Source: Haliotis cracherodii (Eukaryota). Taken from it: 64,000 nucleotides of DNA. The first letter of the stretch is position 1; every line of letters begins with the position of its first letter. Made by a program: the position numbers and the translations under genes. This document shows, one piece after another, positions 4,487 through 64,000 of this stretch. The DNA is taken from positions 25,358,001 through 25,422,000 of the forward strand of contig NW_027266275.1 of the NCBI RefSeq assembly GCF_022045235.1, in the 5' to 3' direction. The notes below the pieces were generated by a model. The model did not search any database. It was not told the origin of the DNA and worked only from the letters and a program-made list of their open reading frames with translations.

Positions 4487-5416
4487 TGCCCGTTCCAAAT
4501 ACACCACCATCGAAAAAACAATTTCATTGCGGTCTCCACAGAACATGAACTAAAACGTTGGCTAATATTGGCAACACTGAAGTCATAATCAAAGATTTAT
4601 AACTCTTGTACTACTTTTGTCATTCAGGAACACAGTATTTAGTTTTATTTGTTCTGAATTTACTCGATTATTGGTTAACATGGATGCACAAAGATACGTT
4701 TATTATTGAAAACATAAAACACAATTTATACATGATCATGATGGCAAGATTACAATACAAACGTCATCATAAGTTTTGTTTATGTTGTTTTTAATGAACT
4801 TACCATATTATGTTTTACGAATGTCGCAATATGTGTGTACAATTGTCTTTAGTAGTTTTCATTCTCATAGTGTAGGACCATTGAGGACCGCGTTGACATG
4901 TGTTCTGTTATCTATTATCGATGGTTCATGTTTATGAAGAGAATAGTTGCATTTCACGTTTCACGGGTCGATGTTTCACTTTTAGTTCATGTGTGTGACC
5001 TAAGGTTTCTCATTTGTTCGGATGTTTCATGTTCACGCAAGGCAATGCAATAACGGATCCCTAAACTACGTATACTAGACGGGTCATTCTAGATGTGTAG
5101 ATAACTCAACATGCTGTTGTATTAATTCTTGTCGTTATGTCACTCCCCAACAGACAACATATATGGTATCCATTGTTAACTATTTTATTTTAGGATATTG
5201 TTACCAAATTCCCAGCTAGAGACGATGGTCGAAATGAAAACAACTTTTTAAAAGTAATTTTCGTCGGTTGAAAAACGGGCAAATGTGTTTAAAATGACAA
5301 GTCAAGGGATTATATACATCGCGTCCTTTATTGTCATATTTTGCATTTATTTTCAGAACTGAAATTAGTTAACAGAAATATATAATAATTTTGTTTCACA
5401 TTTGTGAAATGTTCGT

Positions 5417-5752
5417 CTAGTGGTAGAGCGTCCGCCCGGAGAGCGGAAGGTCCGGGGTTCGATCCCCGACCGCGTCATACCAAAAGACGTTAAAAGATGG
5501 TACTTGTTGTTACCCTGGCGCTCGGCGTTAAGGAGCTAAAACAAGGACTGCTCGGTTCGGAGTCAGTATACTGTGTCTGAGTGGGGTATTCATGTTAAAC
5601 TGTGGCATGGTATCTCAGTGAGCTAGCACTATAAATCGGCATCAGTCCGGACTAGTTCAAGCACACACACACACACACATGTGCATGCACGTCGCTATAT
5701 AAGTGCAATAATCTTGGACGCGACGTTAAACCCCATTTCACCTCACCTCACC
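5417..5752 (+). mobile_element. tRNA-derived SINE (family A, Meta/RUDI-like central domain)
   Basis: Head ggtagagcgtccgcccggagagcggaaggtccggggttcgatcccc, core cgcgtcataccaaaagacgttaaaagatggtacttg, (ca)n tract and (cacct)n tail. At least 6 copies in the window. Confidence 0.9.
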
Positions 5753-51233: not shown

Positions 51234-51383
51234 AACATATGCTATATTTGGGATAACACTTTCTTAGTAAAGTACATATTCTCGTACTTTTTGGAGGTTC
51301 AGTCCCGTCCGGGATTCGAACCCCAAAAGAGTACGAGAATCTATACTTTACTAAGAAAGTGTTATCCCAAATATAGCATCTGT
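51234..51383. repeat. Near-perfect ~150-bp palindrome
   Basis: Arm atgctatatttgggataacactttcttagtaaagta...ctcgtactttttgg and its reverse complement around a short loop. Confidence 0.9.
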
Positions 51384-55863: not shown

Positions 55864-56022
55864 TGAGTAAGTGAGTATGGTTTTGCGCCTTTTTTAGCAA
55901 TATTCCAGCAATATCACGGCGGGAGACACCAGAAATGCGTTTCACACATTGTACCCATCTCGGGAATCGAACCCGGGTCTTCGGCGTGACGAGCGAACGC
56001 TTTAACCACTAAGCTATTCGAC
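55864..56022 (-). mobile_element. SINE family C
   Basis: Reverse complement of 458-626; TSD tgtaatttatgag. Confidence 0.9.
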
Positions 56023-63740: not shown

Positions 63741-63806
63741 CCAAGATTAATAACAGTACTTGTAACGCTTTGATGAAGAAAATGGTTACTATGTTAAAGT
63801 TCATGG

Positions 63807-63864
63807 GGCACTCGTGAAGAGCAGCCTCCTCGTGGTGAGTGCTGGGTAACGCTAATAGCTCTTC
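63807..63864 (+). ncRNA. HDV-like self-cleaving ribozyme, minimal P4
   Basis: P1 GGCACUC/GAGUGCU, P2 GAAGAGC/GCUCUUC, P3 GCC/GGU, L3 UCCUCGU, GG for P1.1, J4/2 GCUAA with the catalytic-position C at 63852. Confidence 0.88.
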
Positions 63865-64000
63865 CCCCGTGTGGAACCGGGGTAGAATATTTCCACAGCA
63901 CCCCATTGCTGGTCGTAAAAGGCGACCAAATTGGGCAGCCCGTTTGCCGTGGGTTGCGTCCCTGTGTCGGCGGAGGACGGGAGTCTGGTAGTTGAGGGCA
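63807..64000 (+). mobile_element. Probable 5' end of a non-LTR retroelement running off the window
   Basis: GC-rich segment that begins at the ribozyme G1 and continues with a structured leader related to SINE-like family B. Confidence 0.6.

What the first reader, a model, noticed from the sequence alone, without database searches (positions are those of the whole stretch)
63807..63864. Compact 58-nt HDV-like ribozyme with an almost absent P4
Seen: every element of the nested double pseudoknot is present in order. G1.U wobble closes a 7-bp P1 (63807-13/63837-43). P2 is 63816-22/63858-64 and P3 is GCC/GGU. L3 UCCUCGU is one base from HDV's UCCUCGC. GG at 63844-45 supplies P1.1, and J4/2 reads GCUAA. 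P4 is reduced to G-UAA-C. Known: HDV-like ribozymes process the 5' ends of R2, RTE and other non-LTR retrotransposons. Inference: this marks the 5' end of a retroelement and is a natural near-minimal ribozyme.
Basis: partly seen in the sequence, partly recalled or inferred. Interest (0 to 1): 0.85.

Follow-up and report, generated by a model that had tools for sequence, protein, structure and literature searches.

The report
Minimal HDV-like ribozyme capping abalone LINE
The first 58 bases of a very abundant black-abalone jumping gene fold into the smallest known form of the hepatitis-delta-type self-cutting RNA, which should trim the element's transcript to its exact first base; that job is well known for other jumping genes and an abalone ribozyme of this shape was already mentioned in the literature, so this is a well-supported but not a new kind of thing.

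Summary
P1, P2, P3, P1.1, L3, J4/2 and a 5-nt stand-in for P4 all sit at 63807-63864.

G63807, the predicted cleavage site, is the first base of a 6.2-kb non-LTR retrotransposon (APE endonuclease, RT, RNase H). An 11-nt target-site duplication abuts it directly. The genome is Haliotis cracherodii. It holds 744 exact copies of the ribozyme core, against 0 for a reversed-pattern control.

Abalone copies keep the pairings (97% of cells paired), but they vary too little to show covariation. Support came from elsewhere. The same core with a free P1 occurs in more than 120 metagenome contigs. There P1 and P2 covary strongly, and 27 hits abut tRNA 3' ends, which marks them as the published, in-vitro-active phage theta ribozymes.

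The head is about 98% identical across LINE lineages whose bodies are about 67% identical.

Cleavage itself is untested. The kind is known: HDV-like ribozymes process R2, RTE and L1Tc. A 2013 paper cites a 2011 review for an abalone HDV-like ribozyme with 5 nt instead of P4.

This scan met the same ribozyme twice before on other DNA of this genome.

Verdict: real, new member of a known kind, moderate interest.

The parts
63796..63806 (+). 5' copy of the target-site duplication, AAAGTTCATGG, directly abutting the ribozyme's first base
   Evidence: The 3' copy, AAAGTACATGG, lies at L031:6316-6326, right after the (ACTC)n tail. An automated search gives 11/12 matches if the preceding T is included.
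63807..63864 (+). 58-nt minimal HDV-like ribozyme: the whole double pseudoknot. Predicted cleavage is 5' of G63807.
   Evidence: Hand check. Full-length alignment to RF02682 and RF00094. 73 copies are 98% identical with 97% of cells paired. The core is identical to the metagenomic/phage minimal class.
63807..63813 (+). P1 5' strand, GGCACUC. G63807 is the first nucleotide of the cleaved RNA.
   Evidence: Pairs 7/7 with 63837-63843, including G.U at the cleavage site. 98.6% of cells are paired across copies.
63816..63822 (+). P2 5' strand, GAAGAGC
   Evidence: Pairs 7/7 with 63858-63864. 93.8% of cells are paired across copies.
63824..63826 (+). P3 5' strand, GCC. Most copies read ACC, which makes A-U in place of the G.U in this copy.
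   Evidence: pair 18-30 is A-U in 28 distinct rows and G.U in 2.
63827..63833 (+). L3, UCCUCGU. C63828 and C63829 are the P1.1 partners. U63827 and G63832 correspond to the HDV U20.G25 pair.
   Evidence: Alignment to the Rfam HDV consensus. Only position 24 (63830) varies commonly, U/C/A.
63834..63836 (+). P3 3' strand, GGU
63837..63843 (+). P1 3' strand, GAGUGCU
   Evidence: All genome copies listed carry this strand or a one-base decay of it.
63844..63845 (+). GG of P1.1
   Evidence: pairs 22-39 and 23-38 are C-G in 30 and 26 of 30 distinct rows.
63846..63850 (+). GUAAC, the 5-nt replacement of P4. About a third of abalone copies read GUAGC.
   Evidence: The same GUAAC occurs in all 95 distinct metagenomic ribozymes and 1,046 times, as part of GGGTAACGCTAA, in the theta-ribozyme supplement.
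63851..63855 (+). J4/2, GCUAA, with the candidate catalytic cytosine C63852 and the two A's that in HDV make A-minor contacts
   Evidence: Aligned to GCUAA of RF02682 and RF00094. The theta paper's segmentation places the catalytic C at the same place.
63858..63864 (+). P2 3' strand, GCUCUUC
63865..63897 (+). Hairpin-type pseudoknot directly behind P2: CCCCG/CGGGG stem, with loop UGUGGAA pairing to UUUCCACA. It is part of the conserved ~300-nt head.
   Evidence: pair 70/85 is A-U in 56 copies and C-G in 6, with 4 unpaired. This is the separate first-reader note s1-847035.
63807..64000 (+). Start of the LINE 5' UTR. The element runs on beyond the window to G000:C12:25428014 (L031:108-6315).

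Best explanation
This is a P4-less ('minimal') HDV-like self-cleaving ribozyme that forms the first 58 nt of an abundant black-abalone non-LTR retrotransposon (CCHC ORF1; ORF2 with APE endonuclease, RT and RNase H; (ACTC)n tail). Proposed mechanism, with shown and inferred steps marked. The element has no conserved upstream sequence (shown). It is therefore transcribed either by read-through from whatever lies upstream or from a promoter inside its own conserved ~300-nt head (inferred). The nascent RNA folds into the nested double pseudoknot, and C63852 in J4/2 catalyses scission 5' of G63807 (inferred from identity of fold and core with ribozymes that cleave in vitro). This leaves an RNA whose first base is G63807. 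Reverse transcription to the end of that RNA gives full-length insertions that begin exactly at G63807 next to the target-site duplication (shown for this copy; the shared boundary is shown for 73 copies). The same head also caps diverged LINE lineages and internally deleted derivatives (shown). It therefore behaves as a shared 5'-end module, like the Pr77/L1TcRz hallmark of trypanosomatid L1Tc/ingi elements. The window copy has an intact ribozyme, but its ORF2 has an in-frame stop and its ORF1 a frame change, so this copy is not autonomous.
For: All helices and core bases are at the stated coordinates. RF02682 and RF00094 align over their full length, with only P4 missing. The element boundary is at G63807 in 73 copies with unrelated flanks, and in contigs of runs from at least three coded organisms (loose ends at L031:107/108). 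A TSD abuts G63807. Pfam finds APE, RT and RNase H downstream. The core has 744 exact copies against 0 for the control. 97% of pair cells are intact across 30 distinct copies. Shared variants keep pairing: pair 18-30 is A-U or G.U, and pair 23-38 is C-G or U.G. Between 19 body clusters the ribozyme is 98.2% identical while the bodies are 66.8% identical. Independent class evidence: the same core with a free P1 gives more than 120 metagenome contigs; 78 of 95 distinct ones have a perfect 7-bp P1 against 2.15 in a partner-swap control, and P2 runs average 6.65 pairs against 1.76. 27 hits start at a tRNA 3' end. The published theta-ribozyme data hold the same core string 1,046 times, and all four theta ribozymes tested in that paper self-cleaved in vitro and were inactivated by C-to-U. 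Homologous heads from another organism keep P1 through changed bases: in L122, pair 6-32 is C-G in place of U-A.
Against: No cleavage assay exists and no raw RNA reads were available; all listed runs were contigs. Within abalone there is not one compensatory change, so covariation there is uninformative. Rfam scores are below gathering, and by themselves are near chance at genome scale (E 0.24-1). The nested-only MFE is not better than shuffles (z = 0.3), which is expected for a pseudoknot but gives no support. G is enriched at -1 and -2 (30 and 24 of 73 copies, background 16%). Extra 5' G's are what reverse transcription of a cap would add, which would favour a transcription start at G63807, although in this copy the G's lie inside the TSD. 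The loci used for the head-versus-body comparison were picked by head similarity, which biases the 98% figure upward. The unbiased re-sampling could not be done.
Confidence: 0.86

Rival explanations
1. The exact 5' end is set by transcription initiation at G63807 from an internal promoter in the conserved head. The HDV-like fold is then secondary or unused. A dual promoter-plus-ribozyme role, as shown for L1Tc Pr77, is compatible with the best explanation; the rival meant here is promoter only.
For: The first ~300 nt are conserved as a block (89-98%) with a sharp drop after it. G is enriched just upstream of the element, as expected if cap-derived G's are copied. Matetovici et al. proposed a promoter role for a ~70-bp LINE-derived head in Haliotis and other molluscs. 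L1Tc's first 77 nt are both promoter and ribozyme.
Against: A promoter does not explain 20 base pairs in HDV geometry, or a core identical at about 22 positions to phage ribozymes that cleave in vitro. In the window copy the upstream GG belong to the TSD and were not added. 43 of 73 copies have no G at -1.
Confidence: 0.07
2. The fold is a structural 5' RNA element, for example a binding site for ORF1p or RT, or an element for translation or RNA stability. It has the HDV-like shape but no longer cleaves.
For: Activity is untested. P4, which stabilises HDV ribozymes, is missing. In this copy P3 has a G.U pair. HDV-like ribozymes of retrotransposons have also been linked to translation initiation (title of Ruminski et al. 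2011, cited).
Against: The catalytic C, the G.U at the cleavage site, the P1.1 GG/CC and the J4/2 A's are all kept in 69-73 of 73 copies. P4-less ribozymes with this same core cleave in vitro. P4 is dispensable for HDV activity. The insertion boundary falls on the predicted scissile bond to the base.
Confidence: 0.05
3. Chance resemblance: a repeat end that happens to satisfy an HDV descriptor.
For: Rfam bit scores are below gathering, and about 1 to 4 hits of that score are expected by chance in 1.18 Gb.
Against: From the chance rate is about 2e-9 per base for one family (my own arithmetic from the reported E-value), so a chance hit landing on the first base of the element is very unlikely. 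The core pattern has 744 copies here and more than 120 in metagenomes, with covarying P1 and P2.
Confidence: 0.01

Closest known systems
HDV-like ribozyme of the abalone Haliotis discus (Webb & Luptak 2011, RNA Biol 8:719, as cited by Eickbush et al. 2013, PMC3774820)
   Same: Same genus, HDV-like fold, and 'only 5 nucleotides instead of a P4 stem', which is what GUAAC at 63846-50 is. Very probably the same family.
   Different: I could not read the review, so sequence identity, the LINE context and the copy number in that report are unverified. The species here is H. cracherodii.
Minimal HDV-like ribozymes (drz-Mtgn, Riccitelli et al. 2014) and theta ribozymes of gut Caudoviricetes phages (Kienbeck et al. 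2024, PMC10879173)
   Same: No P4. The core is identical at all about 22 specified positions: ACC-U-CC-NCGU-GGU ... GG-GUAACG-CUAA. P1 and P2 are each 7 bp. Lengths are 52-61 nt. The abalone linker spacing is shared by 23 of 92. The core string occurs 1,046 times in their data. Tested members cleave in vitro.
   Different: Theta ribozymes sit at the 3' end of phage tRNAs and are proposed to trim tRNA 3' trailers. This one has no tRNA next to it, lies in an animal genome, and starts a LINE. That paper reports nearly 99% of minimal ribozymes in phages.
L1TcRz / Pr77 hallmark of Trypanosoma cruzi L1Tc, NARTc and ingi-clade elements (PMC3185411, PMC4035085, PMC3383444)
   Same: An HDV-like ribozyme forms the very first nucleotides of an APE-RT-RNase H LINE. 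It is shared as a conserved 5' hallmark by otherwise diverged LINEs and non-autonomous relatives.
   Different: L1TcRz is 77 nt and has no sequence relation to this one. Its promoter activity is demonstrated, whereas here a promoter role is only a hypothesis. The hosts are protists, not a mollusc.
R2 retrotransposon ribozymes, especially the silkmoth ones without P4 (PMC3774820)
   Same: 5' processing of a non-LTR element RNA out of a co-transcript. P4 is variable or absent. Cleavage is at or near the 5' junction.
   Different: R2 inserts site-specifically in 28S rDNA, has a restriction-like endonuclease and no APE domain, often uses 28S sequence for P1, and the silkmoth forms have J1/2 loops of hundreds of nt. 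This element is dispersed and the ribozyme is compact.
'LP' (LINE-promoter) head of LP-SINEs and of Nimb-17_LMi, I-3_DR and RTE-9_CPB LINEs (Matetovici et al. 2016, PMC4758252)
   Same: A ~70-bp 5' module is shared by LINEs and short non-autonomous elements, is reported in Haliotis, is limited to the extreme 5' end, and is exchanged between lineages. Here the ribozyme head also caps diverged LINEs, deletion derivatives and, in another organism's runs, a short family.
   Different: The authors proposed a promoter and did not call it a ribozyme. Their sequences are in figures that I could not read, so identity with this ribozyme is a lead and has not been tested.
Genomic HDV ribozyme (Rfam RF00094)
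   Same: Nested double pseudoknot; 7-bp P1 with G.U at the cleavage site; 3-bp P3; L3 UCCUCG; P1.1; catalytic C followed by N-A-A in J4/2.
   Different: HDV has a long P4 (about 30 model positions), so this RNA scores 20.5 bits against a gathering score of 50. HDV processes rolling-circle multimers, not a retrotransposon transcript.

Membership tests
HDV-like (delta) self-cleaving ribozymes | P1 of 6-7 bp starting at the cleavage-site nucleotide, usually G paired to U | tested here: met
   63807-13 with 63837-43, 7 bp, G.U at 63807/63843. 98.6% of cells are paired in 30 distinct copies.
HDV-like (delta) self-cleaving ribozymes | P2 crossing P1, P3 of 3 bp with a 7-8-nt L3, and a 2-bp P1.1 between L3 and the bases after P1 (nested double pseudoknot) | tested here: met
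   P2 63816-22/63858-64, P3 63824-26/63834-36, P1.1 C63828-C63829 with G63844-G63845. Paired cells: 93.8%, 100% and 96.7%.
HDV-like (delta) self-cleaving ribozymes | Catalytic cytosine in J4/2 followed by conserved purines | tested here: met
   C63852 in GCUAA aligns to GCUAA of RF02682 and RF00094. C is present in 71 of 73 copies. Its catalytic role is not testable here.
HDV-like (delta) self-cleaving ribozymes | Score at or above the Rfam gathering threshold | tested here: not met
   RF02682 26.2-31.6 bits against 44; RF00094 20.5 bits against 50. The deficit is the missing P4, which those models require.
HDV-like (delta) self-cleaving ribozymes | Base pairs supported by compensatory changes | tested here: inconclusive
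   Within abalone there are 0 compensatory changes and observed values equal the shuffles. In the metagenomic class with the same core, P1 and P2 covary strongly. One compensatory pair (6-32) is seen in the L122 homologue.
HDV-like (delta) self-cleaving ribozymes | Mg2+-dependent self-scission abolished by mutating the catalytic C | not testable with these tools
   Needs in vitro transcription of about 63780-63870 and a C63852U control.
Minimal HDV-like ribozymes (P4-less drz) | P4 domain absent, replaced by a few nucleotides | tested here: met
   GUAAC at 63846-50. Rfam alignments collapse 15 and 30 P4 positions to 1 nt.
Minimal HDV-like ribozymes (P4-less drz) | Core sequence and segment lengths of the published motif | tested here: met
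   The published segmentation P1(7)|J(2)|P2(7)|ACC|T|CC|NCGT|GGT|P1'(7)|GG|GTAACG|CTAA|P2'(7) matches, apart from 1 extra nt before P3 and 2 before P2'. That spacing is found in 23 of 92 class members.
Theta ribozymes sensu stricto | Cleavage site at the 3' end of a (phage) tRNA gene | tested here: not met
   ARAGORN finds no tRNA in the window and the upstream flanks of 73 copies are unrelated. In contrast, 27 of 120 metagenome hits abut a tRNA. It should therefore not be filed as a theta ribozyme.
5'-processing ribozymes of non-LTR retrotransposons (R2, RTE, L1Tc type) | Ribozyme at the extreme 5' end of an element that encodes endonuclease and reverse transcriptase | tested here: met
   The element boundary and TSD are at G63807. 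APE, RT and RNase H are found downstream.
5'-processing ribozymes of non-LTR retrotransposons (R2, RTE, L1Tc type) | Release of the element RNA from a longer co-transcript in vivo | not testable with these tools
   Only contigs of runs were available, which cannot show RNA ends.
Nimb / I-group LINE (as earlier scan notes call the host element) | RT phylogeny placing it in that clade | not tested
   Only the architecture was checked: APE + RT + RNase H, a CCHC ORF1 and a short-tandem-repeat tail. No reference RT set was at hand.

The most novel reading that the evidence does not exclude
Matetovici et al. 2016 found a ~70-bp 'LP' head shared by Nimb and RTE LINEs and by 'LINE-promoter' SINEs in molluscs, insects, zebrafish and a turtle, and read it as a promoter. 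The most novel reading is that this head is the minimal HDV-like ribozyme described here. One theta-type ribozyme core would then be a pan-metazoan 5'-end module passed between LINE and SINE lineages by template switching. It would also match the tRNA-trimming ribozymes of gut phages at every specified core position. That would raise the question of whether the match reflects common descent or horizontal transfer, or convergence on a minimal optimum.
Probability: 0.4. Interest if true: 0.65.

Novelty: new member of a known kind. Interest (0 to 1): 0.4.

Why it matters
This is a natural ribozyme of only 58 nt with a clear job and hundreds of intact copies, which makes it a convenient model for how little RNA the delta fold needs.

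It also supplies a eukaryotic context, with a function, for the 'minimal' HDV-like ribozymes. The 2024 theta-ribozyme paper found those almost only in phages and left their stand-alone function open.

It offers a concrete, testable explanation for the conserved LINE-derived heads of molluscan LINEs and LP-SINEs: 5'-end definition by self-cleavage, possibly alongside promoter activity as in L1Tc.

None of this changes the known picture of HDV-like ribozymes in retrotransposons. It extends that picture to an APE-RT-RNase H LINE of a gastropod.

Tried and rejected
1. Rfam at gathering threshold gave no HDV hit. The whole-window permissive scan also gave none at E <= 0.5. The models need P4, so I did not take this as evidence against.

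2. Rfam HDV models on the whole genome, used to look for other HDV-like families, found only this one family. RF00094 found nothing.

3. Covariation within 73 abalone copies showed none, because there is too little variation.

4. An unbiased re-sampling of heads through a body-only query listed places but could not cut out any loci.

5. RNA evidence: every listed run is kept as contigs and none is on record as RNA. No transcript ends could be read.

6. Nested-only folding gave z = 0.3, which is uninformative for a pseudoknot.

7. Webb & Luptak 2011, Ruminski et al. 2011 and Jimenez et al. 2015 are not held in the library. The supplements of Matetovici 2016 are not held either. The two literature identities (the H. 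discus ribozyme and the LP head) therefore stay unverified.

8. A search for short TSD-flanked, ribozyme-headed elements in the fetched loci found only the window's own 6.2-kb element.

9. The short family seen in organism B's run is absent from this genome.

10. Retroelement genes behind the stand-alone metagenomic ribozymes: none found. DNA pol III beta and unknown ORFs lie there instead.

11. The LINE clade (Nimb/I) was not resolved because I had no reference RT set.

Full report
**What is in the sequence**

- P1 is GGCACUC (63807-13) with GAGUGCU (63837-43): 7 bp, closed by G63807.U63843.
- P2 is GAAGAGC (63816-22) with GCUCUUC (63858-64): 7 Watson-Crick pairs.
- P3 is GCC (63824-26) with GGU (63834-36).
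- L3 is UCCUCGU. Its C63828-C63829 can pair with G63844-G63845 to form P1.1.
- GUAAC (63846-50) stands where P4 should be.
- J4/2 is GCUAA (63851-55), with the candidate catalytic C at 63852.

Two Rfam HDV models align over their whole length at these coordinates, with the P4 block collapsed to one base. RF02682 scores 26.2 bits (E 0.0047 on 301 nt) and RF00094 scores 20.5 bits. Both are below gathering score. At window scale or genome scale (E 0.24-1 for the best copies) the score alone would not stand out.

**Where it sits**

The window is G000:C12:25358001-25422000 of a 1.18-Gb assembly. Three things identify the genome as the black abalone, Haliotis cracherodii, assembly xgHalCrac1.
- The largest contig is 89,134,964 bp, exactly the largest scaffold given for that assembly, and the total size also matches.
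- The genome carries egg-lysin exons above the Pfam cut-off.

Reading on past the window end (L031) shows a 6.2-kb non-LTR retrotransposon that begins at G63807. Its parts are as follows.
- About 1 kb of 5' UTR.
- An ORF1 with a CCHC knuckle.
- An ORF2 in one frame (L031:2065-5757) with APE endonuclease, reverse transcriptase and RNase H.
- An (ACTC)n tail ending at L031:6315, which is where other copies also stop matching.

This copy is broken. ORF2 has an in-frame stop at L031:3763-3765, and ORF1 changes frame near its start.

The 11 bases before G63807, AAAGTTCATGG, recur as AAAGTACATGG directly after the tail. The target-site duplication therefore touches the predicted scissile bond.

**Copies**

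A BLAST of 63780-64000 against the genome gave 2,162 candidates. The scored copies are 96-100% identical and mostly start matching at or within a few bases of G63807. In 73 distinct copies the upstream flanks are unrelated and the shared sequence begins at G63807. A P1-free pattern for the core has 744 exact matches (383 forward, 361 reverse), against 0 for the reversed pattern. All listed matches carry the same P1 3' strand or a one-base decay of it.

Contigs from sequencing runs of at least three coded organisms break away from the reference at L031:107/108, with flank consensus agreement of only 0.37-0.78. The boundary is therefore the same elsewhere.

**Do the copies keep the fold?**

On the 30 distinct 58-mers, 97% of the 600 pair cells are standard pairs. 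The structure clearly beats every slid register (35-50% paired). There is not one compensatory change, and all measures equal their shuffles. The copies therefore do not refute the fold, and they do not prove it either.

The variants shared by many copies are benign.
- Position 18 is A or G, which makes A-U or G.U in P3. The window copy has the rarer G.
- Position 43 is A or G, inside the 5-nt P4 replacement.
- Position 24 is U, C or A, in L3.
- C23 changes to U, which turns C-G into U.G in P1.1.

**Independent support for the fold and for activity**

I scanned the metagenome collection with CCTCCNCGTGG-N8-GGGTARCGCTAA. This pattern fixes the core and the missing P4 and leaves P1 free. My estimate of chance matches is well below one.

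Among the 95 distinct sequences (example sequences):
- There are 81 different P1 3' strands.
- 78 have a perfect 7-bp partner 16-20 nt upstream of the core, against 2.15 in a control that swaps partners between sequences.
- P2 runs average 6.65 consecutive pairs, against 1.76 in the control.
- Pair 1-37 is G.U (44), G-C (30) or A-U (4).
- Pair 18-30 is A-U (63), G-C (22), G.U (4) or C-G (2).

27 of the 120 hits begin within -1 to +3 nt of a tRNA 3' end (Met, Pro, Leu and CUA-suppressor tRNAs). That is the signature of the published theta ribozymes. Supplementary file 3 of that paper holds the string GGGTAACGCTAA 1,046 times, with a segmentation that matches the abalone RNA element for element. 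The paper reports in vitro self-scission, and inactivation by C-to-U, for the four it tested.

The abalone RNA differs only by one extra base before P3 and two before the P2 3' strand. That spacing is shared by 23 of 92 class members. Its 58 nt lies inside the class range of 52-61 nt.

By architecture and core it is a minimal HDV-like ribozyme. It is not a theta ribozyme in the strict sense, because there is no tRNA beside it.

**Homologues in another organism**

Two metagenome-labelled contigs carry true relatives.
- L122 holds a LINE fragment whose APE domain is 68-72% identical in protein to the abalone element. Next to it is a head with P1 GGCACCC/GGGUGCU, so pair 6-32 has changed from U-A to C-G.
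- L110 holds two heads with the abalone P2 and downstream pseudoknot, but a different, still complementary P1 (GGAGUU with GGAUUCU, 6 bp).

The sample is small, but this is the kind of change a functional helix predicts.

**The head as a shared module**

In the fetched loci the nearly invariant head is joined to bodies that are only 69-78% identical to the reference. It is also joined to internally deleted derivatives, for example head 1-395 joined to 5114-6208 in L007, 1-91 to 3945 in L040 and 1-274 to 2141 in L050.

Across 25 copies in 19 body clusters, between-cluster identity is as follows.

| Element positions | Identity |
|---|---|
| 1-58 (ribozyme) | 98.2% |
| 59-200 | 93.6% |
| 251-300 | 95.5% |
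| 301-1400 (body) | 66.8% |

There is a caveat. The existence of many diverged bodies with the same head does not depend on that bias.

With bodies this far apart, a complete lack of compensatory change points to recent sharing of the head rather than to purifying selection alone. Template switching or recombination could produce that sharing. This is my inference.

In one other organism's run the head is about 70 times deeper than the body and continues into a different sequence at element position ~93-99. That short family is absent from this genome.

**What is already known**

HDV-like ribozymes process the 5' ends of R2, RTE, L1Tc and other LINEs. P4 is dispensable for HDV activity and is absent in silkmoth R2 ribozymes.

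Eickbush et al. [quoted passage not shown] I could not read that review, but the description fits this RNA exactly.

Matetovici et al. 2016 described a ~70-bp LINE-derived head shared by Haliotis, Littorina and oyster 'LP-SINEs' and by Nimb and RTE LINEs of locust, zebrafish and turtle. They proposed it is a promoter.

This scan has met the same ribozyme twice before on other pieces of this genome. The follow-ups there said the small form was unreported for retrotransposons, or known almost only from phages. The abalone citation qualifies that claim.

**Mechanism and rivals**

Best reading (0.86): the element RNA is made as part of a longer transcript or from a promoter in its own head. The ribozyme then cuts 5' of G63807, and reverse transcription of that RNA yields insertions that begin at G63807.
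- Shown: the fold, the core identity, the boundary, the TSD, and the conservation.
- Inferred: the cleavage itself, and the source of transcription.

The main rival (0.07 as an exclusive explanation) is a transcription start at G63807 from an internal promoter. G is enriched at -1 (30 of 73 copies) and -2 (24 of 73) against a 16% background, which could reflect cap-derived G's. In the window copy, however, those G's lie inside the TSD, and a promoter does not explain the fold. A dual role, as in L1Tc Pr77, remains open.

A non-cleaving structural role gets 0.05 and chance gets 0.01. Both are poorly supported.

**Verdict**

The finding is real and correctly interpreted. It is a new member of a known kind, and probably the same family already noted in H. 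discus. The added value here is threefold:
- the tested identity of its core with the phage minimal/theta class;
- its behaviour as a shared head of many LINE lineages;
- the lead that the published 'LP head' is this ribozyme.

Interest: 0.4.

Noticed in passing
window 63865-63897: A hairpin-type pseudoknot lies directly behind P2: a CCCCG/CGGGG stem whose loop UGUGGAA pairs with UUUCCACA. One pair covaries: element positions 70/85 are A-U in 56 copies and C-G in 6, with 4 unpaired. It may stack on P2 and shield the ribozyme fold from downstream sequence. It is the subject of the separate note s1-847035.
   Followed up: partly
G000:C2:20.83-21.69 Mb (also C1:38.55-38.64 Mb, C1:41.1-42.3 Mb, C6:4.2-4.9 Mb, C23:35.5-35.9 Mb, C25:82-107 kb): About 75 of the first 100 listed core matches lie within 0.9 Mb of contig C2, roughly one ribozyme head per 12 kb. 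This is a dense cluster of these elements: an accumulation zone, segmental duplication or piRNA-cluster-like region.
   Followed up: no
L010 and L055 (G000:C6:4.369 Mb; G000:C2:23.94 Mb): Heads occur in tandem. 5' segments of 200-960 nt are followed directly by a new G1 (for example L055: 1-674, then 1-199, then 1-669). Simple 5'-truncated LINE insertion would not give this pattern.
   Followed up: no
5' flanks of 73 copies (positions -1 to -3): G is enriched at -1 (41%) and -2 (33%) against a 16% background, with TG and TGG as the commonest endings. This could be a target preference of second-strand cleavage, added bases, or cap-derived G's.
   Followed up: partly
L031:200-206 in run X3 (organism B): A very abundant short family shares the first ~93-99 nt (ribozyme plus pseudoknot) and then continues as CTCCCAACCCTGCGACTTCA. 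Head depth is about 70 times the LINE body. The continuation is absent from this genome.
   Followed up: partly
L122 and L110 (PEAW01033362.1, PEAW01051765.1): Contigs filed as metagenome carry an abalone-type LINE (APE domain 68-72% identical in protein) and ribozyme heads. This is eukaryotic, probably molluscan, DNA inside a metagenome project.
   Followed up: partly
L135:1641-2770, L096, L113, L165: A group of stand-alone metagenomic minimal ribozymes (P1 GGGCUGC) sits 1-12 nt in front of a DNA polymerase III beta-clamp gene. This is a recurring ribozyme-gene arrangement whose purpose is unknown.
   Followed up: partly
window 51246-51372: A near-perfect palindrome matches the mir-9457 model on both strands (about 51 bits, gathering score 90). 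It is probably a foldback or MITE-like repeat.
   Followed up: no
window 55960-56016 (-) and 5411-5470 (+): Partial tRNA-like matches (33.4 and 27.8 bits, model positions 8-63 and 6-65) that ARAGORN does not call. They are likely tRNA-derived SINE heads.
   Followed up: no
L031:6316-6800 (just beyond the element): A different repeat family starts immediately after the element's TSD (query 717-1201, 93-98% identical copies on many contigs). The LINE therefore inserted into, or next to, another repeat. A further APE-like ORF fragment lies at L031:7088-7408.
   Followed up: no
G000:C7:25.19-25.25 Mb and 25.66 Mb: Egg-lysin family exons (PF01303) occur in at least two neighbouring gene copies, presumably the abalone lysin/sp18 locus.
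   Followed up: no
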